Below are positions 9,367 to 61,115 of a DNA stretch of 64,000 nucleotides, one piece after another (position 1 is the first letter of the stretch; each line of letters opens with the position of its first letter). Below the pieces are notes generated by a model. The model was not told the DNA's origin. It was given only the letters and a program-made list of their open reading frames with translations, and did not search any database. The position numbers and the translations under genes were made by a program. The stretch spans positions 124,001 to 188,000 of the IMG/VR virus record IMGVR_UViG_3300017987_000001. One strand, written 5' to 3'.

Positions 9367-9618
9367 TCATCCACCAACGCTTTGCCGTGCGTTGCGCCGT
9401 GCATCTACAACGCGCGCCCTCGATTTGCTCATCGCAGAAAGAAGCATTTCGATGAACCGTTGTTCTTCGCGCGTGTACTCGTTCGGAGCCTCGTCCGAAC
9501 CATTTGCCGCGAGATCACTTCGGGCGGTCAACGAGCTGAAGGGCACCGTCGGGTACGTCTTCAGCTGCGCCATCTTGCGCAATTGTTGAACGCGTCCAAA
9601 AATCTCGCGAAGCTTCAT
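9367..9618 (-). CDS. Small hypothetical protein (83 aa)
   Basis: Start at MKLREIF; TGATG overlap with the upstream stop. Confidence 0.6.
   Translation of the reverse strand: MKLREIFGRVQQLRKMAQLKTYPTVPFSSLTARSDLAANGSDEAPNEYTREEQRFIEMLLSAMSKSRARVVDARRNARQSVGG
9582..9603. promoter_or_regulatory. 22 bp palindrome copy 1 (ATTGTTGAACGCGTCCAAAAAT)
   Basis: Matches the consensus ATTGTTGGACGCGTCCAACAAT, seen 7 times in the window. Confidence 0.7.
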
Positions 9619-10310
9619 CAGTATCCGCCACCCTGTGCCGCGAACGGGTTCGGCGGAAGCCCGTAGCCAGCTTCCTGCGTCGCTGCCGCGAGCTGCGCAT
9701 CGTGCCCGCCCGGACCCATCTGCGGACCGGCCCACTGCTGCGGGCCGTAGTCGTACTGTTCGCCGCCCATACCAAGCCACTCAGGCGGCAGGAACATCGA
9801 CGCGAAGCCGAGCGTCTCAGCGCCGCCAAGCGCCGAGCGGCCAATACGCGCGGCCTGCCCGAGATTGCCGACGTTGGCCGGGTTCACGAGCTTGCCACCA
9901 GCGCGCGCCATAGCGCCCGGGTTCTTGAAGGTCTTGAGCAAGCGACTACCGGCACCGCTGAACCCGAGACGATTCAGGAGTCCGCCAAGCCCGCGCCCAC
10001 CGTACTGAACCGTCTTACCGATGTTGGTAGCGAGGCGGGTGGGTGTTCGACTCAGGAACTTGAGACCCAAGCCGCGCCCGAGCTTACCAATACCGCTGAG
10101 AAGCGGGCGTCCGAAGGCGAGAATCATCTGAAGCATCTGCGGATTGATGGCCTTCTTCTCCATCTTCGCCTGCTTCACAAGCCCAGCAAGCGCGACGGCC
10201 TGCGCCTTGACGAGCTTCTTGCGCACCTTCCGCTGACGTTGCTTCTTGTAGTCGCACGCGCGCTTCAGCACGAAGAGTGCCTCTTCTTTGGTCAGGATTG
10301 GCATCGGCAT
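9618..10310 (-). CDS. Putative virion protein, basic and Gly-rich (230 aa)
   Basis: ORF track; VKQAKMEKKAIN motif followed by amphipathic/Gly-rich segments. Confidence 0.7.
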   Translation of the reverse strand: MPMPILTKEEALFVLKRACDYKKQRQRKVRKKLVKAQAVALAGLVKQAKMEKKAINPQMLQMILAFGRPLLSGIGKLGRGLGLKFLSRTPTRLATNIGKTVQYGGRGLGGLLNRLGFSGAGSRLLKTFKNPGAMARAGGKLVNPANVGNLGQAARIGRSALGGAETLGFASMFLPPEWLGMGGEQYDYGPQQWAGPQMGPGGHDAQLAAATQEAGYGLPPNPFAAQGGGY

Positions 10311-10383
10311 CCTCCGATGCGCTGAATAGTTCTGCTCCGCATGAGCAATCTACTTGTTCAGCGCGAATGGCGCAAGAGTGATC

Positions 10384-11283
10384 TTACTTCTTGACCTTCC
10401 TGCGAGCGTACTTCTTCTTGCTGTGCTTTGGTCCGCACTTCGCGGACTTGTCACTCGACCCCTTGAACAGTTCGCTGCCGCCACCGATACCTGCGCCAGT
10501 GAGTCCGCCAAGCGCGAGCGAGCCAAGCGAAGGAGTCATGGAAATCTGATCGCCGATCCCCGGCATCTTGGCCTTGATAAGCAGCTTCGCGAGTAGTTCA
10601 GTCAGCGCTGCAGCCCCTGCTCCGCCAATCGCGCCACCGCCTGCGCCGCGACCAACGCGTCCCCAGTTCACGCCCTCATCCTTCTTTTCCTTCTTGTCGT
10701 CCTCGTCGGCAGCACGCTTACGGAACGCGAGCTTCTGCGCCATGCTGTCGAGCAGGTCGTGGCGGCCAAGCTCCTTGATCGCCGCCGCGACCTTCTTCAG
10801 TCGCTTGCGTCGACCGAGACCCATGAACGCCTGCTTGGTAGCCTCGTCCCGGAACTCGATCTTCAGTGGCATGGATAGGTTGAGCGCGCCCTGCGCGTCG
10901 ACCTTCGCATCCTCGATCGCTTCGACTAGCTCGTCGCAGAACGCGTTCGTGGCTTCCTTGGTGAGCGAGCCAGCCGTCAGCTTCGACAGCGCCTCGGATA
11001 GGCCGTAATCCTCGACGACAACCTCCTGCGCCTTCTGTGCGGCCGACTTGATCGTGACTGGGTGCTTGAACATGACCCTATTCCCTTCCAACGTTCCTCC
11101 CATGGCGGCGCAGGCAACTGCCGTTTCGAGATGCTCTGCAACCTTCGATAGCTCTATTTCGAGCGGCGGTACTTCTTCCTTCTTCCGTCCGACAAGGCTC
11201 TTCGTGAACTTGTCGGCAAGTACCCCCGCGATCTTGATATGATCGCCGGTAGCCTCAGAGATCACAAGATGGATATCACTCAT
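10384..11283 (-). CDS. Putative virion protein with C-terminal glycine zippers
   Basis: Start at MSDIHL (RBS GGAG); many KxA motifs; GAGGGAIGGAGAAAL and LALGGLTGAGIGGG segments. Confidence 0.7.
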   Translation of the reverse strand: MSDIHLVISEATGDHIKIAGVLADKFTKSLVGRKKEEVPPLEIELSKVAEHLETAVACAAMGGTLEGNRVMFKHPVTIKSAAQKAQEVVVEDYGLSEALSKLTAGSLTKEATNAFCDELVEAIEDAKVDAQGALNLSMPLKIEFRDEATKQAFMGLGRRKRLKKVAAAIKELGRHDLLDSMAQKLAFRKRAADEDDKKEKKDEGVNWGRVGRGAGGGAIGGAGAAALTELLAKLLIKAKMPGIGDQISMTPSLGSLALGGLTGAGIGGGSELFKGSSDKSAKCGPKHSKKKYARRKVKK

Positions 11284-11425
11284 CGGACTCACTCCTGTTC
11301 TTCCACGCCGCATCAAACTGCCGACGCCATATCCAGTGCCGCACGGTACTCGCGAGCGCCGGTGTTATCGCTACAACCAACAGAACAACTAGAAGAAAGA
11401 TGTTCAGGTTATCGGTATCGCTCAT
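11276..11425 (-). CDS. Small single-TM membrane protein (49 aa)
   Basis: Start at MSDTDN just after the RNAP stop; hydrophobic IFLLVVLLVVAITPALA. Confidence 0.55.
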   Translation of the reverse strand: MSDTDNLNIFLLVVLLVVAITPALASTVRHWIWRRQFDAAWKNRSESDE

Positions 11426-11426
11426 A

Positions 11427-18017: not shown

Positions 18018-18374
18018 TCAGAACCCTCTCTGCGGGTTGTACACATACAGATCGGCCCACCGCAGGAAGACACGCCAGTTCTTCGTCTCCGGATCGTACT
18101 CCCGGTCCTCAGCAGAGATGACTGCATGCCCGTTGGAGTACATCGTGTAGATGTCCGCCATGCGCTTGCGATCCTTCTCGTCACTCATATCGAGAATCTC
18201 GACGTGAGCACGCACGCCCTGCTTGGGCTGCATATGATCGGGATCGTCGTTCTTCAGGTCGGGCACATGGCCACGGAACGGGAGACCGTCCATGCCCGGA
18301 AGAATCGCGGGCATGTCGCGCTGCCCATTGGATGGATCGATCAGCTTGCCGTCGATATCCCAGCGATCAGCCAT
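18018..18374 (-). CDS. Hypothetical protein (118 aa)
   Basis: ORF track; tightly packed in the operon. Confidence 0.7.
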   Translation of the reverse strand: MADRWDIDGKLIDPSNGQRDMPAILPGMDGLPFRGHVPDLKNDDPDHMQPKQGVRAHVEILDMSDEKDRKRMADIYTMYSNGHAVISAEDREYDPETKNWRVFLRWADLYVYNPQRGF

Positions 18375-19831
18375 CAGATCTCCACCCCTCCTGCGGTCAT
18401 CGGAAGAATCTTGTTGTGCGCGTCGTCGGGCTGCGTCTCACCCTCTGCCTCGCGCTCCTGCGGCTGATTCTTCTTCGCACGGCGTTCAGCCTGCCGCGTG
18501 AGCCGCTTGTAGAGCGCCATGCGCTCAACGTGCCGCAGCTCTTCCGGATCAAGCGTAGGCTCCCGAGAGAGCGAGTATGCGGCGGTCGAAGCACCGGCAC
18601 CTAGGAGCGGAATGCCTGCAGTGGGGATGAGAAACGTGAGTATGGCGAGGTTCTTCGCCAATCCCCCTCCCTGCCGGATGATCTCCGCGAGTGCACTCGT
18701 TTGCGCCGCCTTCTCCAGCGCGCCATCGAGTTCGCTCGGCCGGATACCCGCCTCGGCGAACTTCTCGTAGAAGCCGTACTTGAACGCATTCTTCTTCAGC
18801 TTCTCGACGTCACGATCCTTGCGCTCCTTGTTCTCCGTGTGCTTCTTCGTTCCTTCGCCGACCGCCTCGATCTTCCCCTCGTCGACAGCGTCTTCCATAC
18901 CCTTTTCGAGATCGTCGAGTCGCGGCTCGTAGTAATCGTCTCCCTCTGTGAGGTGATCTTTCGCAATCTCCTGTGCCACTGCCGGATTGCTCGTGTGCTC
19001 AAGCTCTACTTCGGTGCCCTTCTCGATCTGAGCCTTCGGGAACATCGACGTGGGCATACCGGCGGCGAGTCCGCCGGGAATCACGTCGTCCTTGCCACCA
19101 ACGAGCTTGGCGAGGAGGCGATAGATCTCCTCCTCCGCCTCATGCTCGTCGACGCCGAGTGACTCTGCTTGCTGGTGGAAGCCCTCGTCGTCGATACCCT
19201 GTCCCATCTGCGTGATGTAGTTCACGAGCTGCTGTAGGATCTCGGGCGGCAGCGACTCTTCAGCCTCGTGCTCGGGCGATTCGATCTCGCCTTCCTCGTG
19301 CTCTTCGCTTTCATCCCCGTTGGCACTCTTCACGACGTACTCGACGAAGCTCTGCATCTTCGGCATGCCGCTGATGCCCTGCAGCGCCTGTGCGAGCGAC
19401 GGAGCTGGCTGCGACGGCCCATTGAGGCCAAGCAGATTGCTGGGCGCTTCGGGCGTGCCGGGAGCGGCCGGTCCCATAGCCGACGGGTTGCCGCCCTCTT
19501 CGACGACCTTCTCCTCAGGCGTGCGGTGAAGCCCGGGGTAGCGCAGCTCTTCGATCATGCGCCGCCGACGATCGGCCTTCTCGGCCTCGTTCTTCTGAGC
19601 AATAGCCTGCAGAAGCGGAGCTTTCTCCATAACCGTGCGGAAGTCCTGCCCCTTCAGCGCTTCGAGCGCGTCGATGCCGATGCCCTTCTGATCGAGCTTC
19701 CTCATGCGCTCGGTCATCGTAGGCGTGGGCATGCCGCTCATCGGCTGGACGCCGGGTAGCCCCGGCATACCTGCGCCGATGTTCGCCTGCTTGAGGTGAT
19801 TTTTGAACGCGTCCAACAATCTCTGGGGCAT
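18374..19831 (-). CDS. Acidic putative virion protein with DUF5661-like segment and C-terminal TM
   Basis: KGTEVELEHTSNPAVAQEIAKDHLTEGDDYY resembles DUF5661; KQAN, KSAN, KNAF, KAAQ motifs. Confidence 0.7.
   Translation of the reverse strand: MPQRLLDAFKNHLKQANIGAGMPGLPGVQPMSGMPTPTMTERMRKLDQKGIGIDALEALKGQDFRTVMEKAPLLQAIAQKNEAEKADRRRRMIEELRYPGLHRTPEEKVVEEGGNPSAMGPAAPGTPEAPSNLLGLNGPSQPAPSLAQALQGISGMPKMQSFVEYVVKSANGDESEEHEEGEIESPEHEAEESLPPEILQQLVNYITQMGQGIDDEGFHQQAESLGVDEHEAEEEIYRLLAKLVGGKDDVIPGGLAAGMPTSMFPKAQIEKGTEVELEHTSNPAVAQEIAKDHLTEGDDYYEPRLDDLEKGMEDAVDEGKIEAVGEGTKKHTENKERKDRDVEKLKKNAFKYGFYEKFAEAGIRPSELDGALEKAAQTSALAEIIRQGGGLAKNLAILTFLIPTAGIPLLGAGASTAAYSLSREPTLDPEELRHVERMALYKRLTRQAERRAKKNQPQEREAEGETQPDDAHNKILPMTAGGVEI
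19799..19820. promoter_or_regulatory. 22 bp palindrome copy 2 (ATTTTTGAACGCGTCCAACAAT)
   Basis: Consensus match; intragenic. Confidence 0.7.
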
Positions 19832-19842: not shown

Positions 19843-21816
19843 CTATCGCATGAATGGGCTACCGGGGGACTGCGCTGCGGGCGCTCCCCGGAAGTAGCCC
19901 ATGATACTCGAAATCGTGTCGAGAATGTTGCCCGTATCTCGGATTGACTGCGGCTTCGTGCCGAGCAGCATACTCAGCAGATTCTCTCTGAGACCGAACG
20001 GCTTCGCGGGCGCCGGGCCGCCCATCCAATGCGGCTTCGCCGGAGAGCCGCCGCCCATCCACGCAGGCTTCTGTGGTCCGCCACCGCCGAGCAGCCCACC
20101 AAGGAACGCCTGCTTCAGCAGCCCAGCCGATTCGTGGACCTTGTCCCAATCGACCGAAGCTGCATGCTCGAAAATGGATTGTAGTATCGTGATCTTCCCG
20201 GTCTTGGGGTTCATGTAGATGTCCCCAGCCTCTGGGTTCTCTGGGTCAAGCGGTCCCAATCGAATCGAATCTTCTTCATCGTCATCAAAGCGATGCGCTC
20301 CTGCATCGACTGCGCGTTGATCTTCTTTCCACTGCTCTTCATCCTCGTCGGGTTCCTTCTTAGAGAATGGCCAGAGCGCTTCCTTCAACAGGATGCCTGC
20401 GTAGTCGGATGCTTTCCTCATGTCTGGATAGTCCTCGTGAATGGAGATCAGTCCGGGCGCGCGGTACGCCCCACTCGGGAACTGACCCTGTGCCTTGATC
20501 CGAGCAATCCGACCAAGGAACTCCTCCGGGTTCTTCAGCATTGCCCGCCGAAGATCCTCGGAGAATCCCGTTCCTACTTTACCAACTGCGGGGCCGTCAG
20601 GCGAGAGCGAATACTCGAAGCCGCCCGCTCCGACGCCCTCCAACCGCTTCTCGCCGGGGAAGATGTCCTTCACGAACACGTCGTGCTCGTCGTACAGCTT
20701 GACCTTCGCGGGCTTGCCGCCCTTCTTCGGCCACGCTACAATGCCCTCATGAGTAAGCGGATCACGCCCACCCTTGACATCCTCCCACAGAGCACGCTGT
20801 TCTTCCGGGGTCTCGGCCATTCGTGGGAGATGGAACTTGCCTTCAGGCAGATGCTTGAGGATTTCGCGGACCTTATCAAGGCGCTCGGCAATCGGGACGT
20901 CCATGCCGATGGGCTTCTTGCCGTACTTCAGGATATTGAAGATTGCATTGCGGAGCTGAACGCCCTGCTCGCGCTGCTTCTTCAGCGATTTGCGCGTCGA
21001 GGAGTTAAGAATCCCACCCAGTTCTTGGGGAGGGATGGCACGATCATCACGCGTACCGTAGAGTTCCCCACGGAGAATTGATCCCACGAGATGCTTGGGG
21101 ATGTTGAGGCCAGTAGTTCCTCCAACTCGGTAGGTGTGGACAATAGGTCGGCCAGTCGTTGTCGGCCGGTATGAGAGAACATCGATCTTATCCGAGAATA
21201 GCTTGTAGAGGGCTGCTGCTCCATCGATCTTCTCCATGTGGAGGTACTTCTCGTCGAAGAGCTTCTCCACGTCCTCGGCCGGAACCTTGGCGTACCGAAC
21301 CTTCTTGTGCTTGATGACCTCCGTGGGCGTCGTGTTGATCATCAGCCACGAGCCGCCCTGCGTCTTCTTCGTACGCGGCGAGCCGCCGGTGGGCGGTCCG
21401 CTCTTGCGTATCATCGTGTACATCTCTGGGTGCTTCTTGTGCGTGACCACGAAGTTGATCTTGTTCGGCTCGACCTTCGTGACCAGCACCGTGCCTTTGT
21501 CGTGCGTCTTCACCAGCCCCTTGCCGTAGCCCGACGTTATTTCGCCCTCGAAATTCGCGTAGGCTCCGGTGTGAAGCGGTTGTTGGAATGCTAAAACTTT
21601 CTGCCCCGACTCCTCGGGGAGTTTGCGTGATGCCCAACTGAGAAGTGATGGCTTGCCGCCTAGGTTTGGTCCGAACCGAATATCGTAGTGCGGCCCAGCT
21701 CGGTCAGCTAGGTGGCGCTGGATCACATACAGAAGCTCACGGCCCTTCGGGAGATCCGTAACGCTCCCGAAGCGCCGTGGGTCTGGTAGGCCCGGCGCGA
21801 ACTCAGTCTTGGCCAC
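19843..21816 (-). CDS. LigD-type 3'-phosphoesterase domain fused to ATP-dependent DNA ligase, plus KxA-bounded tail
   Basis: PE motifs IQRH...HYDIRF, H..YANFEG...GYGKG. Ligase motifs EKIDG, GELY, EGIV, KVK and OB-fold GKVGTGF. Confidence 0.88.
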   Translation of the reverse strand: MAKTEFAPGLPDPRRFGSVTDLPKGRELLYVIQRHLADRAGPHYDIRFGPNLGGKPSLLSWASRKLPEESGQKVLAFQQPLHTGAYANFEGEITSGYGKGLVKTHDKGTVLVTKVEPNKINFVVTHKKHPEMYTMIRKSGPPTGGSPRTKKTQGGSWLMINTTPTEVIKHKKVRYAKVPAEDVEKLFDEKYLHMEKIDGAAALYKLFSDKIDVLSYRPTTTGRPIVHTYRVGGTTGLNIPKHLVGSILRGELYGTRDDRAIPPQELGGILNSSTRKSLKKQREQGVQLRNAIFNILKYGKKPIGMDVPIAERLDKVREILKHLPEGKFHLPRMAETPEEQRALWEDVKGGRDPLTHEGIVAWPKKGGKPAKVKLYDEHDVFVKDIFPGEKRLEGVGAGGFEYSLSPDGPAVGKVGTGFSEDLRRAMLKNPEEFLGRIARIKAQGQFPSGAYRAPGLISIHEDYPDMRKASDYAGILLKEALWPFSKKEPDEDEEQWKEDQRAVDAGAHRFDDDEEDSIRLGPLDPENPEAGDIYMNPKTGKITILQSIFEHAASVDWDKVHESAGLLKQAFLGGLLGGGGPQKPAWMGGGSPAKPHWMGGPAPAKPFGLRENLLSMLLGTKPQSIRDTGNILDTISSIMGYFRGAPAAQSPGSPFMR

Positions 21817-21842
21817 TGCAGGCTCCTGTCAAAGCCCGTGCA

Positions 21843-22412
21843 TTATAGACGAGTGCCGCGAATCAGGCAATATACATCGCGGTTCTTGTCGACGTGGTCG
21901 ATGTCGCTCCAGATGGGGTTGCCTATCCCGAGATCGGACAGGAATGACTCCTCTCGGGCCACGGACTCCTTGTTCATCGTGACGATCGTACCTCCGACAG
22001 CCGTCACGCGCGCCAGCTCTCGTGAGACGGTCTCCCGGTCCTTCGCCGCATTGATGCTCTGCATCGTCATGATGTCGACCACGAGATCGAACGTGCCGTC
22101 GTCGAAGGGCAGCTGGAATGTGTTCAGCGTGACGGGCGTCACGGTCTTGCGGTTGTTGGCCGCTCTGCCCACCCAATCGCCGAAGAGATCCGCTGCCCAC
22201 ACGTGCCCGCACTTCGATGCGATCTGCTGCGTGAACCGCCCGTAGCCACAACCGAAGTCGAGACCGTGCGTGTAGAAGCCCGTGAGCACCTTCGTCAGCT
22301 CGGCCCCAATGATGGTGCCCTGCCGCACGTGATCCTCACCCACGTGGCCCACGCACTTGTCGCCGAAGCGCTTCTTGCGATCGGTCCAGTATTTCAGCGT
22401 GTCGGAGAACAT
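21843..22412 (-). CDS. Class I SAM-dependent methyltransferase
   Basis: GLDFGCGYG motif I; FDLVV motif. Confidence 0.85.
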   Translation of the reverse strand: MFSDTLKYWTDRKKRFGDKCVGHVGEDHVRQGTIIGAELTKVLTGFYTHGLDFGCGYGRFTQQIASKCGHVWAADLFGDWVGRAANNRKTVTPVTLNTFQLPFDDGTFDLVVDIMTMQSINAAKDRETVSRELARVTAVGGTIVTMNKESVAREESFLSDLGIGNPIWSDIDHVDKNRDVYCLIRGTRL

Positions 22413-22413
22413 G

Positions 22414-23343
22414 TTAGTCCTCGGAGATCGTAGGATATACGTACCACTGAATGGTCTTGTGCAGCCCTTCGAGCAACTTCATCTTCGGCTCGAACTTGAG
22501 TGCTTCGCGCATCTTCGTCACGTCGAGCACCTTGCGCGCCGCGCCGTTGGGCTTCTCCGTATCCCAGACGACCTCGCCCTTGTATCCGGTCAGCTTGACG
22601 ATCTTCTCCGTCAGTTCCTTGACCGTCGTGCCGATACCGGTGCCGATGTTGATCGTACCCATCGCCAGCTTCTCGTAGGCGAGGAAGATGGCATCGGCAG
22701 CGTCGTCGACGTACATGAACTCACGGATCGGGCTTCCATCTCCCCAGCACTTCACACTGGGCTTGTCCTCCTGTACGGCTTCAATGAAGCGCGCGATGAG
22801 CGCACCGACGACATGCGAGCGGTAGATCGTGAAGTCGTCGTGCGGGCCGTAGAGATTCGTGAGGATGGCCTGCCCGCCCATGATGCCGTGCTGCTTGCGA
22901 TACTGCCGCTGGCAGACCAGATGGATGCGCTTGGTCATGCCATAACCCTCGACGGACTCATGGCACGGCCCAGCTTCGAGATTCTCCTCGACGAGGTCTT
23001 CCCCCACGTCGCCCGGGTAGGCGCACGCTGAGCCGACAGAGAAGACCTTCTTGATCTTCATGCGCGCGGCAGCCTCCCACACGTTCAGCGCCATGATCGA
23101 GTTGATGTGGAACATATCGGCAGGCTGGTACATGTTGATGCCGATGCCGCCGTAATAGGCTGCCGAGTGAAGGATACCGTCGACGTGCTCGTGCCGCTGC
23201 AGGTAGCGGCAGACACTGTTGAGGTCCATCAGATCCATCTCGGTCGAACGCGGCGCAAGAACCTCGATGTGCTTCTCCTGTCTGAAGCGACGCACGAGCT
23301 TCTGTCCCAGAAAGCCTGACCCGCCAGTGATCAGAATAACCAT
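22414..23343 (-). CDS. fcl: GDP-L-fucose synthase-like epimerase/reductase (extended SDR)
   Basis: TGGSGFLG, SACAYP, YGMTK, NLYGPHD, WGDGSPIREFMYVDD, KPNGAARKVLD. Confidence 0.85.
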   Translation of the reverse strand: MVILITGGSGFLGQKLVRRFRQEKHIEVLAPRSTEMDLMDLNSVCRYLQRHEHVDGILHSAAYYGGIGINMYQPADMFHINSIMALNVWEAAARMKIKKVFSVGSACAYPGDVGEDLVEENLEAGPCHESVEGYGMTKRIHLVCQRQYRKQHGIMGGQAILTNLYGPHDDFTIYRSHVVGALIARFIEAVQEDKPSVKCWGDGSPIREFMYVDDAADAIFLAYEKLAMGTINIGTGIGTTVKELTEKIVKLTGYKGEVVWDTEKPNGAARKVLDVTKMREALKFEPKMKLLEGLHKTIQWYVYPTISED

Positions 23344-23987
23344 CAGTTCCTCCTCGTGAAGATCGCATCACCCCAGAAGTCGGGGGTCGACCCCGGCTGG
23401 AAGTGACGCAGTGTGAATCCCTGCTCGTTCATGTACTTCTCGATCTCGGGCAGCAGCTTCGTGCCTTTGTACAGCGGCTTGAGCCACGCCTCACAGATGA
23501 CCAGCTTGCAGTTCTCCAGCGTCTTGAGCGCTCCAAGCAGCACCTCGTAGTCGTGTCCCTGCACGTCCGTGACCATGACGTCGATAGGCGGCAAATTCAG
23601 CATGTCGATCGCCACTACTGCCACAGGGATCGTCGTATGGGTGCGTATCGACCGAAATCGCTTCTTCGCTATGTCCTTGTCCAGCGGGTGAAGCGACGAG
23701 CATTCGAGCGGGACCGTCGAGTACCACGGCCGAACGCCTGCCCGATCCGACACGATCTTCTGCAGGCATACGACATCCGGGTACTTCTCGCCGATCACCT
23801 CGGCGTTCGACGAGTCGCCCTCGACGCACACGATCTTCGCGTTCCACTGACGGTACGCTTCGATCTCCTGCCCGATACCAGCGCCTACGTGAAGAATCGT
23901 AGGTTCGTCTTCCGGCTGGATCTCTGCCAGCCGCATCCCGATGTCGATCAACGCTGGCACAACTTCCCTTCGATCAGATAGTGCCAT
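23343..23987 (-). CDS. FkbM-family methyltransferase
   Basis: LHVGAGIG, VCVEG, DVMVTDVQGHDYEVLLG, WGDAIF; start uncertain. Confidence 0.85.
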   Translation of the reverse strand: MALSDRREVVPALIDIGMRLAEIQPEDEPTILHVGAGIGQEIEAYRQWNAKIVCVEGDSSNAEVIGEKYPDVVCLQKIVSDRAGVRPWYSTVPLECSSLHPLDKDIAKKRFRSIRTHTTIPVAVVAIDMLNLPPIDVMVTDVQGHDYEVLLGALKTLENCKLVICEAWLKPLYKGTKLLPEIEKYMNEQGFTLRHFQPGSTPDFWGDAIFTRRN

Positions 23988-26419: not shown

Positions 26420-26422
26420 GAC

Positions 26423-32297: not shown

Positions 32298-32298
32298 G

Positions 32299-32985
32299 CT
32301 ATCTCCTCGCGATCTTGAATGGCTTGCGCTTGCCCTGCAGTACCATGCGCAGGCTCTGCTTGTAGCCGAGATGGGTGGACATATCGAGTACGCCAAGCCA
32401 CGGCCTCGGCTTCATCTTCAGGAACTTCTGATCGTAGTACCAGTCGGACATCGACTTCTGGTCCACGCGCCCGGTGACCTTCGGGATGCCGAACTTCTCA
32501 GCGAAGTCACGTCGAACAACCCAGCACGGGCCGTTCGACGTGTTCTTCAACCGCACCTCATAGTCTCCGATCTGAACGGTGGAGCGCGTGGGGTGCTTGC
32601 GCTCCTGCAGTCGATCGGTATGCATCGCTGCAGCTACCACATCCTCGCGCTCGTCGAGCACGAGCTTGCCCGCCTTCAGCCACTCGGGCTTGAGAATCAT
32701 GTCGTCATCAACCCACGACACGTACTTCGCGTCGCTCGCTTCTACCTGCTTCCACATCTGGCGCAGCGCGTACGACTTCTGCCACTGCGGAACGTTGCGC
32801 TGATTCTTGATGATCTGTTGCACGCGTCCAACAGTCTTCAGCCACTTGTACGTGCCGTCGATCGAGCCGTTGTCGATGACGAGCAGGTGGGCATCTCCGA
32901 TGTCGGATGCGAGCAGCGACTCCACGCACTGCTTCAGGAAGTCGAGTCGATCACGCGTGATCACCGTGATGATTGTGTCGGGCAT
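32299..32985 (-). CDS. Glycosyltransferase family 2
   Basis: LKQCVESL, IDNGSIDGT, WVDDD. Confidence 0.88.
   Translation of the reverse strand: MPDTIITVITRDRLDFLKQCVESLLASDIGDAHLLVIDNGSIDGTYKWLKTVGRVQQIIKNQRNVPQWQKSYALRQMWKQVEASDAKYVSWVDDDMILKPEWLKAGKLVLDEREDVVAAAMHTDRLQERKHPTRSTVQIGDYEVRLKNTSNGPCWVVRRDFAEKFGIPKVTGRVDQKSMSDWYYDQKFLKMKPRPWLGVLDMSTHLGYKQSLRMVLQGKRKPFKIARR
32814..32835. promoter_or_regulatory. 22 bp palindrome copy 3, degenerate (TCTGTTGCACGCGTCCAACAGT)
   Basis: Core match with compensatory CTG/CAG flanks; intragenic. Confidence 0.5.
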
Positions 32986-33866: not shown

Positions 33867-33902
33867 TGCCCTGCGGTCCCTCCTCGATTAGGGACGGCGG
33901 CG

Positions 33903-36895: not shown

Positions 36896-37592
36896 CCTGC
36901 TCCTCTGCGATGAACAGTACCGTAAATGTAACCGAGTCGTCTGGCATTGTAAACTGAATTCCAGCCCACACGCACGTGAGCGTCTTCTTGTTGACCTGTA
37001 CCTCGACGACCATCGCTTCCTCACCCTCGATCTCGGGCAGCTCGTAGGTGGTTCCGAGTTCGGCGTTCCGAGACATGAGCACCAGCTGATTGCCATCGCG
37101 AAACACCGACGAGTACTGCTGGCGCACACGCCCGAATGTCCCCTTGATAGCGACAGGTACCGTGGTGCGCTTCGGGATGGTTACGTTCGGAACGTCGAGC
37201 GTGGCAGGCGGAATCTCGTGCGTCTCGTCGACCTCCACACGTGTGGGGATATCCGTGTCGACAGGAGGAACAGCGCGTCCGGCCGGTGCTTGCTTCGGCG
37301 CTTTGTTGGACGCGTTCAAAAATGTCTGCTCCACATCGGCCTCGTCCGGGCTGGCCTTCTTCTCCGAGCCTTTGGCCAGTGCTCCCGGCTCGACTACAGC
37401 GATGGTACGCATTTCACCACCTTCGCACACCACGATGTTCTGCTCGATCTGAGGGTTCTGCGCGTCGAAGCCCATGCTGCCACCGACCTCTCCGCCCTTC
37501 CGGTGGGAGGGGATGACGGTCGCATGCAGCGCCTCATCACGTGCGTATTCGGTGCGGTTCTCCGGCCCAAAGTCGCCTTCTGTGGGGGTCAT
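36885..37592 (-). CDS. Hypothetical protein, first gene of the structural module
   Basis: Start at MTPTEG (RBS GGAG), downstream of a sigma70-like promoter. Confidence 0.7.
   Translation of the reverse strand: MTPTEGDFGPENRTEYARDEALHATVIPSHRKGGEVGGSMGFDAQNPQIEQNIVVCEGGEMRTIAVVEPGALAKGSEKKASPDEADVEQTFLNASNKAPKQAPAGRAVPPVDTDIPTRVEVDETHEIPPATLDVPNVTIPKRTTVPVAIKGTFGRVRQQYSSVFRDGNQLVLMSRNAELGTTYELPEIEGEEAMVVEVQVNKKTLTCVWAGIQFTMPDDSVTFTVLFIAEEQDDG
37302..37323. promoter_or_regulatory. 22 bp palindrome copy 4 (TTTGTTGGACGCGTTCAAAAAT)
   Basis: Consensus match; intragenic. Confidence 0.7.
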
Positions 37593-40178: not shown

Positions 40179-41462
40179 CTAGCCGGTCTTGCGCTTGCGC
40201 TTCGACTTCGCGGGCTTCACCTCGACCTTCGCAGCTTGCTTGAGGTACTCATCCAAGCGCCGCTTGATCGTGTGCATAGACACTTCGAAGTCTTTGGCAA
40301 TCGCAGCGTACGAACGTCCGGCTTCACGCATCTTCGCCATGCGCTTGAGCTGCTTCTCGGTGAAGTCGATGCGCTTACGCGTGTGTGCCTTCGGCTTCTC
40401 GGCCTTGGACTTCGGCTTCTTGTCAGACATCGACGTCTTCACGTACTTCCCCATTTTCTGTACGCGCTCCTTGAGTCCGTAGTCCTTCATTGCGTCGAGG
40501 AACTTCTCGGACCCAATCGAATACTGGAACGGGGTACCGGCAACGTTGAGCCGCGAGTTTACGGCCAAAGCCTCACCGGGAATCTCGATCGCCGACTTGC
40601 CTTCATAGTACTGCGTCCACGCCCACGCAACTGCATGAGAGAGTGCGCGCGGAGACGGCCGCGCTCGCTGATTGAGCGCGTTCCGCGTACGATCCTGTAC
40701 ATCGATCAGGAACTCACGAAGCGCCTGTCGTGGATCATTCGCCTTCATGATGCCGTTGTGCGCAACACCGTGCCAGAAAAGCTTGGCCTTCCTCGGCTGC
40801 CACTGCATGGTGATCAGCGCGACCGACAGGATCGATTGCTGATAGACTGTCGGACGCCGCAGCGCACCCATCCGCCCTTCGAAGACTCCATTGAGGCTGA
40901 TCATGGAGTCCACGAAATGCTTGGCGAACTGGCAGTACAGTGCAGGGTAATGCGTCTGCACCCTCGCGATGCTCTGCGAGAATGAATCAGCGATGAACGT
41001 CACGGCACTCATCAGCTTACCAACGCCCCGCTTCCCGAGAATCTCGATGATCTTCTTGCCGTAATAGGCCACGAACATATCGGCCTTCGTACGGCTGCCC
41101 ATACCGGTGTCGAATGATATGTACAGACGGTCGACCTGTGCCATATCCTTGCACTTGTACGTGATCATGACGAAGTACATCGGGATTCCTGTTCGTGCGA
41201 TGGTCGTGAGCCTGTGGTAGCCGTCAACGATGAATGTCTTGGCCCCGACCGCCGCAAGCGAGAGTACCGATCCCGGTCGGAAGGCACCCTCGTCCAGCAT
41301 CATCTCCAGCCCGCCGAGTGTGACGTTCCGCATCGGGCGCTGCTTCGGGTACATCATCGTCTTGAGCATCTCGCGCGCCTTGACCGGTGTGATCCGCGTC
41401 AGCTTCACGCGGATGCTCAGGATAAACCTGAACAATCCAAACAACGAAGACAGAAAAGCCAT
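40179..41462 (-). CDS. ParB/Srx-like N-terminal domain protein with C-terminal HTH
   Basis: FIVDGYHRL motif; C-terminal REAGRSYAAIAKDFEVSMHTIKRRL helix-turn-helix; start uncertain. Confidence 0.65.
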   Translation of the reverse strand: MAFLSSLFGLFRFILSIRVKLTRITPVKAREMLKTMMYPKQRPMRNVTLGGLEMMLDEGAFRPGSVLSLAAVGAKTFIVDGYHRLTTIARTGIPMYFVMITYKCKDMAQVDRLYISFDTGMGSRTKADMFVAYYGKKIIEILGKRGVGKLMSAVTFIADSFSQSIARVQTHYPALYCQFAKHFVDSMISLNGVFEGRMGALRRPTVYQQSILSVALITMQWQPRKAKLFWHGVAHNGIMKANDPRQALREFLIDVQDRTRNALNQRARPSPRALSHAVAWAWTQYYEGKSAIEIPGEALAVNSRLNVAGTPFQYSIGSEKFLDAMKDYGLKERVQKMGKYVKTSMSDKKPKSKAEKPKAHTRKRIDFTEKQLKRMAKMREAGRSYAAIAKDFEVSMHTIKRRLDEYLKQAAKVEVKPAKSKRKRKTG

Positions 41463-42570: not shown

Positions 42571-42592
42571 ATTGTTGGACGCGTCCAACTAT
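42571..42592. promoter_or_regulatory. 22 bp palindrome copy 5 (ATTGTTGGACGCGTCCAACTAT)
   Basis: Near-perfect consensus; sits between a stop codon and the next RBS. Confidence 0.75.
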
Positions 42593-49135: not shown

Positions 49136-49210
49136 TGGAACGTCCGGCGGGGGTCGAACCCGCATCTTGCGCCTTTAGAGAGCGCCGCACTCCCATTGTG
49201 CTACGGACGT
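49136..49210 (-). tRNA. tRNA with CUA anticodon (amber suppressor), CCA encoded
   Basis: Manual cloverleaf: ACGTCCG/CGGACGT acceptor, GCAC/GTGC D arm, GCGCT-CTCTAAA-GGCGC anticodon arm, GCGGG-TTCGACC-CCCGC T arm, U73, CCA; 75 nt. Confidence 0.93.
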
Positions 49211-54760: not shown

Positions 54761-55198
54761 CTACTCACGTTGCGAGCGCGGGACGAGCGAGAACTCCGTC
54801 GCTACGAGATCGAACCCCGCAATGAAGTCCTCCACGACGATGTACTTGCGTGGGGTTCCGTTGCTGGAATTCGTCGGGTCGGGTATCGCATCTCCGCGCA
54901 TGAGCTGCTCGTACAGCTTCAGCGGATCGTGCCCGAGCGCCTTGGCGAGATTGATGAACGACTTCGCGCGCATTGCATCCTTGCGCGAGTAGTTCTCGAT
55001 CGTCGACCGGCCGACTCCCGCCTTCTTCGCGAACGCGCCCATCGTCATGCCCTTCTTCGCATTGTGCTGCTTGATGAGCGTAAGAAGTGCGGGCATCAGC
55101 TCGCCCATGTACAGATCCACGCCCCAAGGCTGTCGTCCGTGCAGTACCTCTGCCAGCACGTGTGCCTCGTGAGCGTACGTCTTGTCCTTCGTCGCCAT
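54761..55198 (-). CDS. XRE-family HTH DNA-binding protein
   Basis: Start MATKDK; GMTMGAFAKKAGVGRSTIENY...LAKALG. Confidence 0.8.
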   Translation of the reverse strand: MATKDKTYAHEAHVLAEVLHGRQPWGVDLYMGELMPALLTLIKQHNAKKGMTMGAFAKKAGVGRSTIENYSRKDAMRAKSFINLAKALGHDPLKLYEQLMRGDAIPDPTNSSNGTPRKYIVVEDFIAGFDLVATEFSLVPRSQRE

Positions 55199-56450: not shown

Positions 56451-56974
56451 TGGCGTCTCAGATCCTTAGACATCATCCTACTGAAGAGCCGCTGCTTCAC
56501 GTCGAAGATCGCATTCTTGATGCTGTCGATCTTGCGATAGCCCTTCTTCGTGACCGCATCCAGCTCTTCGATGGCTTTGGATATCACTCCCGTGAAGTGC
56601 GATGCCGTCTCGACTACCTGAGGACCGTTCGCTACCTGCTTGAGCGCAACAGCGAGATGGTCCACGAGCGCGGCATTGAACTCCGCAGGCGGCAGCGACT
56701 CGATGCCGGATATCATATCCCAATACTTGAGCGGAATGCGCATATCATGCTGATCATCGTCGTCCGGGTCAACGCGCTTGCGCACGTCACCGTGCCGGAA
56801 GGCAACAGCAACTTCGTTGACGACGATGACCTCGAAGTCACAGCCGGGATACGCAATCACGACGCTAGGCAGTGAGTTCTTCCCGCCCTTCACGACCACT
56901 GACGAGAAATTACTCCGTCGAGATTTCTTCAAAAGTCTGGGATCCAAGCCAGACCACGACTTACGTTTGGCCAT
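56447..56974 (-). CDS. Hypothetical protein (175 aa)
   Basis: ORF track; RBS GAGGGGG. Confidence 0.65.
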   Translation of the reverse strand: MAKRKSWSGLDPRLLKKSRRSNFSSVVVKGGKNSLPSVVIAYPGCDFEVIVVNEVAVAFRHGDVRKRVDPDDDDQHDMRIPLKYWDMISGIESLPPAEFNAALVDHLAVALKQVANGPQVVETASHFTGVISKAIEELDAVTKKGYRKIDSIKNAIFDVKQRLFSRMMSKDLRRQ

Positions 56975-56989
56975 TTCACCCCCTCATCG

Positions 56990-57017
56990 TTGACTTACAT
57001 CACCCAAGGTGTATCAT
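56990..57017 (+). promoter_or_regulatory. Sigma70-type promoter TTGACT-N16-TATCAT on the plus strand
   Basis: Read directly; opposes the coding direction. Confidence 0.6.
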
Positions 57018-57022
57018 TGCTC

Positions 57023-57155
57023 TGCTTGGCGGAGAGTTCGGGAGGCAGATCACAACTTCAACCCCCCAGCAAGTGATTTCCGATACAGACAGTGGGGCAC
57101 TGCTCTGTCCACCAAGCAACAACGGCGACCCAGCCCGGGTCGCCGTTGCTTTTTT
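57023..57155 (+). ncRNA. Putative structured small RNA (~130 nt)
   Basis: Lies between a plus-strand promoter and terminator; closing stem TGCTTGG/CCAAGCA plus internal hairpins. Confidence 0.5.
57121..57155 (+). terminator. Intrinsic terminator on the plus strand
   Basis: AACGGCGACCC/GGGTCGCCGTT 11 bp stem, then GC-TTTTTT. Confidence 0.75.
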
Positions 57156-57171
57156 GGACGCGTCCAACAAT
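57150..57171. promoter_or_regulatory. 22 bp palindrome copy 6 (TTTTTTGGACGCGTCCAACAAT)
   Basis: Perfect 14 bp core; intergenic. Confidence 0.75.
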
Positions 57172-57495
57172 CTACTTGGAGTCGGATGCAGAGCTGGACT
57201 CCTCCTCGTCAGGCTTCGCCTCACCGGTCGCACGCTTCTTCAGCCCGTCTTCGAGCGCGGTGCCGCCGATGAACATCGCCGACACAGTAGCGACAACCAT
57301 GCCGAAGATCTCCGCCATGTTGTTGACGATCTCGGGATCCTCTCCCTCCGGGAGCCGCCCCAACAACATGAAGTAGCTCGCCACGACCGCCAGTATGGCG
57401 AAGACGCCCTTCCGACTCGCGAAGATGTTACCGAGAGACTTGAGTCCTCCGTACTTCGCAAGCTGCTCCACGGCTTTCGCGACATGGTTCTTCAT
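57172..57495 (-). CDS. Two-TM membrane protein (holin-like topology)
   Basis: Two hydrophobic helices, charged C-terminus; function is inference. Confidence 0.6.
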   Translation of the reverse strand: MKNHVAKAVEQLAKYGGLKSLGNIFASRKGVFAILAVVASYFMLLGRLPEGEDPEIVNNMAEIFGMVVATVSAMFIGGTALEDGLKKRATGEAKPDEEESSSASDSK

Positions 57496-58718: not shown

Positions 58719-59206
58719 GGTTGCCATTTCTGTCTCAGCCCAGCGGCAAATGCGTCGAACGGCAAAACCGTGAGCCGCGAGCCATCGTGGCCGTTCCGAA
58801 TGATCGCGTTGACGCCCGGGATGACCGAGACGTCGGCATCGTGGATGATCCAGTTGCTCTTGGCGACCAGCGGGAAGACCACTCCTACTTTCAGTCCTTC
58901 TTCGTGCGTCGCGCGGGCTTCGATGAACGCCTGCGCGATCGGATGCTTCATGAAGGATTTCAGCAACAGGTCTCCGATGACCTGCCCCTTCAGTTTGGTA
59001 ACGGTGACATATACGGGTGGGTTGTACGCGTCGTTGAACCACTCGAACCCGAACTCATCACCGGCCTCGTGCGCCAGCTCTCGGGCATCCTCATCATCCA
59101 ACAGGATGGAGAGGAGCCGGTTGAGCATGCGAATGTCATAACGCTGCTCCGATTGCTGCCGCTTGTCGGCTTCGAACTGGTCGAAGCCGGGAAAGAGATT
59201 GTTCAT
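58715..59206 (-). CDS. Hypothetical protein (163 aa)
   Basis: ORF track; ATGA overlap. Confidence 0.65.
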   Translation of the reverse strand: MNNLFPGFDQFEADKRQQSEQRYDIRMLNRLLSILLDDEDARELAHEAGDEFGFEWFNDAYNPPVYVTVTKLKGQVIGDLLLKSFMKHPIAQAFIEARATHEEGLKVGVVFPLVAKSNWIIHDADVSVIPGVNAIIRNGHDGSRLTVLPFDAFAAGLRQKWQP

Positions 59207-59781
59207 ACCGTTCCCTCATCACACAGCGAGTCGGTGAGCTTCCTGATATAGTTGCGCACGCGACGGAGCCACTCGCAGTCACGGAAGTTGACGAAGAACA
59301 TGAAGACGGGGATGTTGAGCACCTGCGCCAGACCACGCACGTACGTACCATTTGGCGCTGTGTCGTTGCGCTCCCAGTACGAGATAGTGGTCTGTGCGAC
59401 TGGGATACCCTTGTCAGTCATGAGCTTCGCGAGGCGCCACTGTGGGACGCTCCGCTCTTCTCTGAACCTCCGTAGATTCTCTCCGAAGTGGTAGTCGTAG
59501 TGCGTGGGTGGTTGGGGGAGCGCGGGCAGATCTAAGATCTGCCCGGGCGGGACAGCTATGTACGCTTCATCCGATAGCTCATTGTTCTCGGTATCGAACT
59601 TCAGGTCTTCGAAGTGGTGCCAGTAGAGCTTGCGACGCCCATTCCACTGTACGGCGACCTTGTTGAAGTTCGACACACGAGTCGTTTGCTTGCGTACCGC
59701 GATACCCTTACGATCCTTCTTCGCGACCAACAGCTTACCGTTGGCCGCATACAGATCCGTACGCGCCCACACAACCCCCAT
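59203..59781 (-). CDS. Protein with C-terminal XRE-family HTH
   Basis: FGENLRRFREERSVPQWRLAK...QTTISYWERN..P. Confidence 0.85.
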   Translation of the reverse strand: MGVVWARTDLYAANGKLLVAKKDRKGIAVRKQTTRVSNFNKVAVQWNGRRKLYWHHFEDLKFDTENNELSDEAYIAVPPGQILDLPALPQPPTHYDYHFGENLRRFREERSVPQWRLAKLMTDKGIPVAQTTISYWERNDTAPNGTYVRGLAQVLNIPVFMFFVNFRDCEWLRRVRNYIRKLTDSLCDEGTV

Positions 59782-59827
59782 GTAGTAGCTCCCTCCTCAA
59801 GCAACCCATATGCTATCTGAAGTGGAA

Positions 59828-61024
59828 CTACGATTCAAGCGGCTCGTCGTCTTCGCACGCAACTTCCGGATCCTGAACCGTGGACTCCGGAATGGGCATA
59901 GCACCCACCCATTCCTTGTAGTCGTTGATGCCCAACCGCTTACGGAGTTCGACCATAAGCTCAGGATTCGACTGAACAGCCAGCCCCACATCCTGCCCGG
60001 AAACCGCCTTCAGCCCGAGCTGTCGACAGTTGAACGAGCGCGTGAGCGCCGTCATATTCTCCGTAGAGGGTGTCACCTCAATGAGATCCTTTACCGCCGC
60101 TTTCTGCTGCGACAGCATTTCGGCGGTAGCGTGATTCCAGTCGAAATGCATTCGTGCGAGCGGGCCAGAATGATCGTAGACGAACAGCGTGTCGATCGAG
60201 CGCTTGTGCTCGCCAAACGAGTTCTTCTCCGATCGGAGCCTGAGCTGCGTCAACGTCTGCTCGGACCCGCGCTGATCCTTGATGCGGCGGATGCTGAGGT
60301 ACACGGTCGCGTAGAAGTCCTGCGCGATACCGCTCGGCTTCGACTTCTCGTGGCCGGTACGCCCATCCATCTTCTGCTTCTCGTGGTTCACGTAGATCAT
60401 CGCCATCGGCCAGCCTGCAAGCTTGCTGGCATACGTCTTCAGCCACTTCGTCCAGAGCAGCGCTTCGGACGAGTAGTCGCGCTTCGCCGAGCCGTCCTTC
60501 GCGATCTGTTCTCCGCGCTCCTCCGTGGCTGCGCCACTCAGGCTGTCCAAACCTACTGCGATGAGGAAGTCGCGACTCGGCTTCTCCTTCTTCATCCACT
60601 CGATAATCCACGTCAACGACTCCTGCGCTGCATCGACGCTGGTAACGGGACGCATGAGGATGCGCTTCGCCATCTCGCCGCATGTTGACTTCAGCATCGG
60701 TGCGCTGATCTTCTCGCCTTCCGTCTCCACGAGCCAGCCGGATCCCGTGAAGCTGCAGATGTGCCGCATGAAATCAAGCAGGAGCGCCGACTTGAACGAC
60801 TCGGGCGGCCCAGCGATGCCATACGACTTCCCGAGGATCAGCTTGTCACTACCGAACAGGTACTCCAACGCCAGCGACTGGAGCGGCAAGCCGACGTGCC
60901 GCTCGTTGATCAGTTCGCTGGCGTAAACGCCCTCCGCGCCGAACTGATTCTGTGCGCCATGCAGCAGCCCAAGGTGGGCGTCGGCAGGCATTGCTGCAGT
61001 GGCTTTCGCTTTTCGCTTTCCCAT
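59828..61024 (-). CDS. recA: RecA/UvsX-like recombinase
   Basis: Walker A-like GPPESFKS, Walker B VGLDSL, VNHEK, GIAQDFYATVYL, EKNSFG. Confidence 0.85.
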   Translation of the reverse strand: MGKRKAKATAAMPADAHLGLLHGAQNQFGAEGVYASELINERHVGLPLQSLALEYLFGSDKLILGKSYGIAGPPESFKSALLLDFMRHICSFTGSGWLVETEGEKISAPMLKSTCGEMAKRILMRPVTSVDAAQESLTWIIEWMKKEKPSRDFLIAVGLDSLSGAATEERGEQIAKDGSAKRDYSSEALLWTKWLKTYASKLAGWPMAMIYVNHEKQKMDGRTGHEKSKPSGIAQDFYATVYLSIRRIKDQRGSEQTLTQLRLRSEKNSFGEHKRSIDTLFVYDHSGPLARMHFDWNHATAEMLSQQKAAVKDLIEVTPSTENMTALTRSFNCRQLGLKAVSGQDVGLAVQSNPELMVELRKRLGINDYKEWVGAMPIPESTVQDPEVACEDDEPLES

Positions 61025-61093
61025 GATTCCTCCAAGGTGGGCGGCCGTAGGTCATCACGTGGTGCCCCGTTTTAAATGCACCGCCCACCCACG

Positions 61094-61115
61094 ATTGTTG
61101 AACGCGACCAACTAT
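61094..61115. promoter_or_regulatory. 22 bp palindrome copy 7 (ATTGTTGAACGCGACCAACTAT)
   Basis: Consensus match; overlaps a stop codon upstream of recA. Confidence 0.65.

What the first reader, a model, noticed from the sequence alone, without database searches (positions are those of the whole stretch)
9582..61115. Seven dispersed copies of a 22 bp palindrome (ATTGTTGGACGCGTCCAACAAT), four of them inside genes
Seen at 9582, 19799, 32814, 37302, 42571, 57150 and 61094, each within a few mismatches of a perfect palindrome with an invariant ACGCG core. The AT-rich flanks stand out in this GC-rich sequence and force unusual codons where intragenic. Copies are 4-15 kb apart and occur in all modules. 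Inference: intragenic, widely spaced palindromes behave more like parS-type, nucleoid-organising or packaging/ejection sites than promoter operators. Three copies abut stop codons, so a regulatory role remains possible.
Basis: partly seen in the sequence, partly recalled or inferred. Interest (0 to 1): 0.8.

Follow-up and report, generated by a model that had tools for sequence, protein, structure and literature searches.

The report
Dispersed 22-bp protein-binding palindrome in jumbo phage
An uncultured 208-kb phage carries ten copies of one 22-bp symmetric DNA word, mostly wedged between one gene's stop codon and the next gene's start and kept in a distant relative, so it is most likely the docking site of a still unidentified phage regulator protein.

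Summary
Six copies lie within 3 mismatches of the palindrome and a seventh (32814) within 4, against 0 in shuffles. The source contig (IMG/VR, 207,857 bp) holds 10 copies.

The claim "four inside genes" does not hold. All genes are on the minus strand. Five of the seven window copies overlap or follow a stop codon within 22 nt (P about 1.6e-6). Only 32814 and 37302 are deep inside genes.

Sequence is conserved, not structure. Of 21 deviating arm pairs only 1 stays complementary, and the RNA hairpins are weak (mean -3.3 kcal/mol). The three copies lying inside ORFs use rare codons.

A relative with 52% protein identity and 48% GC has a perfect copy at the position homologous to 19799. The site upstream of the RecA-like gene is a diverged CGCG-centred element in five of six related lineages examined.

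Near-identical palindromes flank TetR-family genes in many bacterial loci. One MAG has three copies around parAB.

Best reading: a binding site for a dimeric DNA-binding protein that acts on transcription at gene junctions, like an operator or stoperator. A parS-like role for the phage's ParB/Srx-HTH protein is not excluded. The binder is unidentified.

The parts
9582..9603 (.). Copy 1 (minus strand ATTTTTGGACGCGTTCAACAAT). It starts 14 nt after the TGATGA stop of 9618-10304(-). It lies either 8 nt before the ATG or in the first codons of a small conserved ORF, 9367-9618(-).
19799..19820 (.). Copy 2. It starts 22 nt after the TAG of the LigD_N-like gene 19843-21816(-) and covers codons 4-11 (RLLDAFKN) of 18374-19831(-). 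A perfect copy sits at the homologous place in relative L340.
32814..32835 (.). Copy 3, the weakest (4 mismatches, but a 20-bp palindrome with 1 arm mismatch). It lies about 150 nt inside the glycosyltransferase-2 gene 32299-32985(-).
37302..37323 (.). Copy 4. It lies about 270 nt inside ORF 36885-37592(-), in an Ala/Pro/Lys-rich, low-complexity-looking stretch (my reading of the translation; not tested).
42571..42592 (.). Copy 5, the best match (1 mismatch). It contains the TAG stop of 42589-42780(-) and ends 10 nt before the ATG of 42291-42560(-), filling a 28-nt gap. It sits after the first gene of an apparent operon that ends with the ParB/Srx-HTH gene.
57150..57171 (.). Copy 6. It starts directly after the TAG of 57172-57495(-) and is followed by a strong GC hairpin.
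61094..61115 (.). Copy 7. It contains the TAG of 61112-62506(-), lies 69 nt upstream of the RecA-like gene 59828-61024(-), and is followed by a long GC hairpin. In five of six related lineages examined this place holds a diverged CGCG-centred element.
57120..57148 (.). GC-rich hairpin (12 pairs) next to copy 6. The palindrome's T-run forms its tail on the + strand. The fold z-score is -4.4.
61035..61090 (-). Long-range GC stem between copy 7 and the RBS of the RecA-like gene. A GC hairpin occupies the same place in relatives (z -2.9 to -4.5).
54761..55198 (-). Candidate binder A: XRE-type HTH protein (145-168 aa). It evolves fast, and its putative recognition helix differs between relatives. 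It lies in the operon downstream of copy 6.
59203..59781 (-). Candidate binder B: XRE/DicA-like HTH protein (192 aa). It lies in the operon headed by copy 7, and its recognition helix (AQTTISYWER) is invariant in six relatives.
40179..41462 (-). Candidate binder C: 427-aa protein with a ParB/Srx-type DGYHR motif and a C-terminal HTH. It is the last gene of the apparent operon that contains copy 5.

Best explanation
The element (consensus ATTKTTGRACG|CGTYCAAMAAT) is the recognition site of a two-fold symmetric, sequence-specific DNA-binding protein. The genome is an uncultured ~208-kb jumbo phage that encodes its own multisubunit RNA polymerase and transcribes essentially one strand. Ten copies are spread over all modules (replication, small early-like genes, sugar genes, RNAP region, tail). 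Nearly all are squeezed into the few bases between a stop codon and the next ribosome-binding site. I infer that the bound dimer acts on transcription passing through these junctions, either as an operator or as an elongation roadblock. That would punctuate very long co-directional operons in the way stoperators do in Cluster A mycobacteriophages. One ancestral copy would control the RecA-like/XRE operon. SHOWN: enrichment, dyad symmetry, conservation of sequence rather than pairing, junction placement, codon cost, and conservation at two homologous places in relatives. INFERRED: that a protein binds, which protein it is, and what binding does.
For: There are 6-7 copies against 0 in shuffles, and 10 in the 207,857-bp contig, 7 of them in this 64-kb window (P=0.012). 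5 of 7 window copies lie within -4..+25 nt of a stop codon, where 3.8% of positions qualify (P=1.6e-6). The three copies outside the window behave the same way. Both arms are equally conserved, and 21 deviating arm pairs include only 1 that remains complementary. The three copies lying inside ORFs sit in the lowest 2.7-3.6% of codon-preference windows. Relative L340 (52% aa identity, GC 0.48) has the perfect palindrome ATTGTTGAACGCGTTCAACAAT. It lies 33 codons before the first alignable residue, against 32 in the window; it matches 20 of 22 bases while the flanks are unalignable. The site before the RecA-like gene is a CGCG-centred AT-rich element followed by a GC hairpin in L271, L272, L275 and L282. 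Near-identical 22-mers sit at the promoter of TetR-like genes in 16 metagenome contigs. TetR_N, tied with Vut_1, is the commonest family flanking the motif in 55 bacterial loci. This shows that such words serve as operators for dimeric HTH proteins.
Against: No binder has been identified. No TetR-like gene was found in the ~95 kb of this genome I could read. The conserved XRE-192 has an invariant recognition helix while the RecA-upstream element varies between relatives. No consistent promoter lies next to the copies. Three copies lie inside ORFs, and the conserved L340 copy is 122 nt into its gene. Relatives at 49-83% identity showed no further copies in 6-22 kb windows. No RNA data could be listed.
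Confidence: 0.45

Rival explanations
1. The copies are parS-like loading or organising sites. The phage's ParB/Srx-HTH protein (40179-41462) binds them and bridges, spreads along or positions the jumbo genome, or silences it, rather than acting as a classical operator.
For: The copies are dispersed and some are intragenic. The inner sequence TGTTGGACG|CGTCCAACA resembles the canonical parS (TGTTNCACGTGAAACA, from my own knowledge) with 2 extra central bp. The 427-aa protein has a DGYHR ParB/Srx motif plus an HTH. It lies in the same apparent operon as the best copy, 42571. MAG contig L354 has three copies, one of them inside a ParB_N gene next to a ParA gene.
Against: Pfam does not call ParB_N in the phage protein, and GERRxR is absent. 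Its nearest clusters are DGQHR/DUF6551/GmrSD_N types. No ParA-type family appeared in the listed Pfam results for the window's proteins (one search showed only 25 of 44 families). The phage protein is not similar to the L354 ParB. In L354 two of the copies sit just upstream of promoter-like sequences of unrelated genes. Junction placement is not expected of a centromere.
Confidence: 0.2
2. The element is a promoter, pause or termination signal read directly by the phage's own multisubunit RNA polymerase.
For: The phage encodes beta/beta'-like subunits. The element is about the size of a phage-RNAP promoter, lies in intergenic gaps, and its 3' arm ends in a -10-like AAYAAT. L275 has TGATATAAT at the same place.
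Against: A palindrome would act in both directions in a one-strand genome. In 42571, L130 and 9582 only 8-13 nt separate it from the ATG, which leaves no room for a leader containing the RBS. Copy 57150 is followed at once by a terminator-like hairpin. Ordinary hairpin-plus-T terminators already exist in the window.
Confidence: 0.12
3. The element works as an RNA hairpin, for example a processing site, a stabiliser, or a translational operator next to the RBS.
For: It is transcribed. Four copies end 8-13 nt before, or just after, a start codon.
Against: The hairpins are weak (0 to -7.2, mean -3.3 kcal/mol) and the coding strand has no advantage over the antisense strand (-2.8). Only 1 of 21 deviating pairs is compensated. 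In context, the palindrome often pairs with other sequence instead. Rfam has no match.
Confidence: 0.07
4. The element is a recombination, homing or mobile sequence that marks cassette boundaries, comparable to REP/MITE elements, attC sites or a homing-endonuclease target.
For: It lies at gene boundaries right after stop codons. The clade carries inteins and LAGLIDADG insertions.
Against: Nothing is shared beyond the 22 bp. No transposase or RAYT was seen. Gene order around the conserved copies is the same in relatives. One copy has been stable in place across relatives with 52% aa identity.
Confidence: 0.05

Closest known systems
Stoperators of Cluster A mycobacteriophages (L5, Bxb1)
   Same: There are many copies of one short repressor site spread over the whole genome. 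Each phage's sites co-vary with its own repressor, and the sites are proposed to stop transcription elongation (PMC9283540, PMC6550527). The placement in short gaps or at stop codons is from my own knowledge of the L5 literature.
   Different: Stoperators are asymmetric 13-14 bp sites bound by a monomeric repressor, and they are predominantly in one orientation relative to transcription (PMC9283540, PMC6550527). Here the site is a symmetric 22-mer, there are 10 copies in 208 kb, the phage is a jumbo phage with its own RNAP, and no repressor is known.
TetR-family operators
   Same: Both are AT-flanked palindromes of about 22 bp. ATTATTGAACGCGTTCAATAAT lies at the promoter of a ~190-aa TetR-like gene in 16 contigs. 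TetR_N flanks the motif in 11 ORFs, at most 11 of the 55 bacterial loci.
   Different: No TetR-like gene was found in the held part of the phage. The phage has many copies rather than one, and they are not next to a regulator gene.
parS/ParB centromeres, including the dispersed centromere repeats of prophage N15 (own knowledge)
   Same: These are short palindromes, sometimes intragenic and dispersed. The half-site has a similar flavour (TGTT..AC). A ParB/Srx-fold protein is encoded nearby. L354 has copies around parAB.
   Different: The centre is two bp longer than in parS. No ParA was found, there is no GERRxR motif, and the copies are placed at gene junctions.

Membership tests
parS / ParABS partition site | Cognate ParB with an N-terminal CTPase domain (GERRxR box) | tested here: not met
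   The 427-aa protein has DGYHR instead. Pfam finds no ParB_N hit at E<=0.001. Its nearest atlas clusters are DGQHR/DUF6551/GmrSD_N, with ParB_N only in a minority of members.
parS / ParABS partition site | ParA-type Walker ATPase encoded next to ParB | tested here: not met
   No CbiA/AAA_31/ParA family appeared in the listed Pfam results for the 76 window proteins (25 of 44 families shown), nor among the 19 families found in 60 proteins (52 from the window, 8 from L044/L130). About 110 kb of the genome was not readable.
parS / ParABS partition site | 16-bp consensus TGTTNCACGTGAAACA | tested here: not met
   The inner 18 bp TGTTGGACGCGTCCAACA has two extra central bases. It matches 12 of 16 positions only after these are deleted (direct reading; the consensus is from my own knowledge).
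Stoperator-type dispersed repressor sites | Many copies across all modules, at gene junctions | tested here: met
   10 copies occur, in the replication, early-like, sugar, RNAP and tail regions. 8 of 10 lie at or just after a stop codon.
Stoperator-type dispersed repressor sites | Asymmetric 13-14 bp site in one orientation, bound by the immunity repressor | tested here: not met
   The site is a symmetric 22-mer, so orientation is undefined. Repressor binding cannot be tested here.
TetR-family operator | Palindrome adjacent to, and autoregulating, a TetR gene | tested here: not met
   An HMM of the TetR-like proteins that flank the look-alike palindromes finds nothing in the window, L044, L130, L099 or L273. 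No TetR_N appeared in the listed Pfam results for the window's proteins (one search showed only 25 of 44 families). The rest of the genome was not read.
Intrinsic terminator / structured RNA hairpin | Stable stem kept by compensatory changes, followed by a U-tract | tested here: not met
   Mean dG is -3.3 kcal/mol and 1 of 21 deviating pairs is compensated. There is no consistent T-run and no Rfam hit.
Sigma-70-type promoter | -35 and -10 hexamers 16-18 bp apart | tested here: not met
   No scan hit overlaps a copy, and promoter-like sites are no more frequent than in shuffles.

The most novel reading that the evidence does not exclude
The palindromes are loading sites for the phage's own ParB/Srx-fold HTH protein (DGYHR type). 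That would make this a parS-like system in which a non-canonical ParB relative organises, positions or silences the genome of a jumbo phage that carries its own RNA polymerase.
Probability: 0.15. Interest if true: 0.75.

Novelty: new variant of a known kind. Interest (0 to 1): 0.5.

Why it matters
Little is known about how jumbo phages with their own multisubunit RNA polymerases regulate long one-directional operons. This is an uncultured clade with hundreds of environmental relatives. A 22-bp site in ten copies, conserved across a 12-point GC shift, gives a concrete handle on that question. It can be used as bait to fish out the regulator, or a ParB-like organiser, and as a portable control element.

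Tried and rejected
Nucleotide searches of the INPHARED phage collection found nothing.

The strict 20-mer is absent from IMG/VR. Looser patterns in IMG/VR and in metagenomes gave hits at about chance level apart from the source contig itself.

IMG/VR holds almost no relatives.

A T4-like contig (L090, L113, L182) that carries the motif in FLDAFN codons of a tail-sheath-stabiliser gene was judged a chance hit selected by the pattern.

The 911-kb contig with at least 9 core copies turned out to be a coding repeat.

TTAACCGCGGTTAA, the variant found in relative L271, is multi-copy in several phages, but those are unrelated to this one.

A peptide-motif explanation was rejected because the copies lie in different reading frames or in non-coding frames.

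The bias in reading register is explained by how a stop codon can overlap the word.

No RNA sequencing run could be listed.
Full report
WHAT IS THERE. A search with up to 3 mismatches finds six copies of ATTGTTGGACGCGTCCAACAAT, at 9582, 19799, 37302, 42571, 57150 and 61094, against none in 100 dinucleotide-preserving shuffles. The seventh copy, at 32814, has 4 mismatches but is itself a 20-bp palindrome with one arm mismatch. Nothing else matches at up to 6 mismatches. The window is 100% identical to part of IMG/VR contig IMGVR_UViG_3300017987_000001, which is 207,857 bp; the window corresponds to about positions 124,004-188,003. A degenerate pattern scan finds nine copies in that contig, six in the window and three outside (L044, L099, L130). 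With 32814 that makes ten. Seven of ten in 31% of the genome is a mild clustering (P=0.012).

THE GENOME. GC is about 0.60. Nearly all genes are on the minus strand and my gene calls cover 96% of the window. It is a jumbo phage with multisubunit RNA-polymerase genes: an 1832-aa beta/beta'-like ORF and a 620-aa beta' C-terminal ORF. It also has a DNA polymerase A fragment, a RecA-like gene, a LigD_N-like gene, a sugar-nucleotide/glycosyltransferase/methyltransferase block and, outside the window, a tail sheath gene. The nearest named phages share only about 30% identity in the RNAP subunit. Metagenomes, however, hold hundreds of relatives at 50-83% identity, several on contigs of about 200 kb. 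The DNA occurs in sediment and seawater metagenomes, and no RNA run could be listed.

WHERE THE COPIES SIT. I read them on the coding (minus) strand.
- 42571 and 61094 contain the upstream gene's TAG (ATAGTTGG...).
- 57150 starts right after a TAG.
- 9582 starts 14 nt after a TGATGA stop.
- 19799 starts 22 nt after a TAG and covers codons 4-11 of the next gene.
- Outside the window the pattern repeats. In L044 the TGA stop shares its last A with base 1. In L130 a TGATAG stop overlaps the element. L099 has ATAG.
- Only 3.8% of positions place a 22-mer within -4..+25 nt of a stop codon, so 5 of 7 has P=1.6e-6.
- Only 32814 (in a GT2 gene) and 37302 are deep inside ORFs.

The copies fill the tiny gaps between genes. 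For example, 42571 occupies a 28-nt gap and ends 10 nt before the next ATG. The small ORF at 9367-9618 is real, since a relative encodes a 55%-identical peptide, and its conserved part starts just after the palindrome.

SEQUENCE, NOT STRUCTURE. Across the ten copies, 13 positions are invariant, including CGCG at the centre, and both arms are conserved alike. Of 21 arm pairs that deviate from the consensus, only one stays Watson-Crick complementary. As RNA the copies fold weakly (0 to -7.2, mean -3.3 kcal/mol). The coding strand has no advantage over the antisense strand (-2.8). In context the arms often pair with other sequence instead. Rfam finds nothing there. The copies lie in different reading frames or in non-coding frames, so this is not a peptide motif. 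Where the element overlaps an ORF it imposes rare codons, placing it in the lowest 2.7-3.6% of 7-codon windows. Together these features are what a two-fold symmetric, sequence-specific double-stranded-DNA binder would produce.

CONSERVATION IN RELATIVES.
(a) The 19799 copy. The 485-aa protein's ortholog in contig L340 (Logan SRR21285564) is 52% identical, has the same LigD_N-like gene upstream, and comes from a genome with GC 0.48. It carries a perfect palindrome, ATTGTTGAACGCGTTCAACAAT. That copy lies 33 codons before the first alignable residue, against 32 in the window. It matches 20 of 22 bases including the synonymous positions, while the flanks are unalignable.
(b) The 61094 copy. In L271 (70% identity) the stop codon of the upstream gene lies inside TTTTAACCGCGGTTAATA. 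L272 has AAGTACGCACGCGTTCGTAAAT, and L275 and L282 have AAACGCGT-centred AT-rich elements. In all of them a GC hairpin and then the RBS of the RecA-like gene follow. L279 has no clear element.
(c) Not conserved. The equivalents of 57150 and 9582 in relatives have at most a half-site. No other copies appear in 6-22 kb windows of relatives.

The element is therefore old in the clade, and this phage has an unusually large set of copies.

WHAT BINDS SUCH WORDS ELSEWHERE. ATTATTGAACGCGTTCAATAAT occurs in 16 unrelated low-GC metagenome contigs. It lies 10-15 nt upstream of, or at the promoter of, a ~190-aa gene that gives weak TetR_N hits in six of six proteins tested. A scan of 185,579 species genomes gave 55 loci against roughly 9 expected by my arithmetic. 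The commonest flanking families are TetR_N and Vut_1, 11 ORFs each; the many Arthrobacter/Glutamicibacter hits suggest a TetR-transporter pair, which I did not check locus by locus. One MAG contig (L354) has three copies. One lies inside a ParB_N gene next to a ParA gene, and two lie just upstream of promoter-like sequences of other genes. The literature library holds none of the core words in a relevant context.

CANDIDATE BINDERS IN THE WINDOW. Neither Pfam nor an HMM of the look-alike TetR proteins finds a TetR in the ~95 kb I could read. Three HTH proteins remain.
- XRE-192 (59203-59781) lies in the operon headed by copy 61094. Its recognition helix is invariant in six relatives while the element varies.
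- XRE-145 (54761-55198) lies in the operon downstream of copy 57150. It evolves fast and its helix differs in every relative.
- The 427-aa protein at 40179-41462 has a ParB/Srx-type DGYHR motif and a C-terminal HTH. It is the last gene of the apparent operon that carries the best copy. It is not similar to the L354 ParB.

None of the three is demonstrated to bind.

MECHANISM. I commit to a dimeric DNA-binding regulator whose sites sit at gene junctions, where it blocks or gates transcription of long co-directional operons (confidence 0.45). This works like the stoperators of Cluster A mycobacteriophages, which are many genome-wide repressor sites that terminate elongation and co-vary with each phage's repressor (PMC9283540, PMC6550527). 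It is not a member of that family, because those sites are asymmetric 13-14-mers bound by a monomeric repressor. The rivals are a parS-like organiser site for the ParB/Srx-HTH protein (0.2), a signal read by the phage RNAP (0.12), an RNA hairpin (0.07) and a recombination or homing site (0.05).

CAVEAT. A tRNA with anticodon CTA lies at 49136-49210(-). If TAG is partly decoded, the five copies that contain or follow a TAG would be translated as short extensions of 17 to at least 37 codons. The next gene's RBS and ATG still follow each copy, so the junction placement stands.

Noticed in passing
window 49136-49210 (-): A tRNA with anticodon CTA, which reads TAG (ARAGORN labels it 'tRNA-Pyl'; Rfam tRNA score 63 bits). 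Five same-frame ORF pairs are separated by a single TAG (at 55718, 52433, 41495, 39188, 8633), against 0 for TGA and 1 for TAA. This suggests possible amber suppression or partial recoding.
   Followed up: partly
window 56900-57120 (-); L271:5700-5800, L272:15370-15400, L279, L282: A non-coding stretch after the terminator next to copy 57150 contains TCACTTGYTGGGGGG. The motif is conserved in relatives at 49-70% protein identity. It may be a conserved promoter or a small RNA.
   Followed up: no
window ~37660 and ~40110 (-); 37649-37621 (-): TTTAGCTATCAGCTT is repeated directly after two terminator hairpins. One of them is followed by a strong sigma-70-like TTGACC-17-TATTAT.
   Followed up: no
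L007, L016, L031, L034, L037, L040, L054, L057, L058 (IMGVR_UViG_3300042923_001726, 911 kb, GC 0.42): At least 9 exact GTTGGACGCGTCCAAC copies lie inside a larger repeat that reads as a peptide repeat (..NGWTRPT..). It is unrelated to the phage.
   Followed up: partly
L291, L334, L289, L312/L329: The palindrome TTAACCGCGGTTAA, which is the variant at the RecA-upstream site of relative L271, is multi-copy and intergenic in several unrelated phage contigs. L291, for example, has 5 copies in 10 kb.
   Followed up: partly
L354:3565-6860 (MAG Aggregatilineales, JAVJSU010000063.1): Three copies of ATTGTTGAACGCGTTCAACAAT lie around a parA-parB pair, one of them inside parB. This may be an undescribed parS type, or a regulon of another factor.
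   Followed up: partly
window 18374-19831 (-) vs P0137, P0138, P0142, P0146: Orthologs in relatives carry an extra N-terminal ~40 aa (MPFKSEAQRKWMYANHP...), a module that is widespread in phages. The window protein lacks it and starts just before the palindrome.
   Followed up: partly
window 33903-36677 (-); P0011, P0028, L147: There is a weak intein hit in the 924-aa ORF. The RNAP genes of relatives carry inteins or LAGLIDADG insertions that the window's copies lack.
   Followed up: no
window ~21800-33900 (-): A large block of epimerase/dehydratase, UDP-glucose dehydrogenase, glycosyltransferase and FkbM-type methyltransferase genes. It may serve DNA or surface glycan modification.
   Followed up: no
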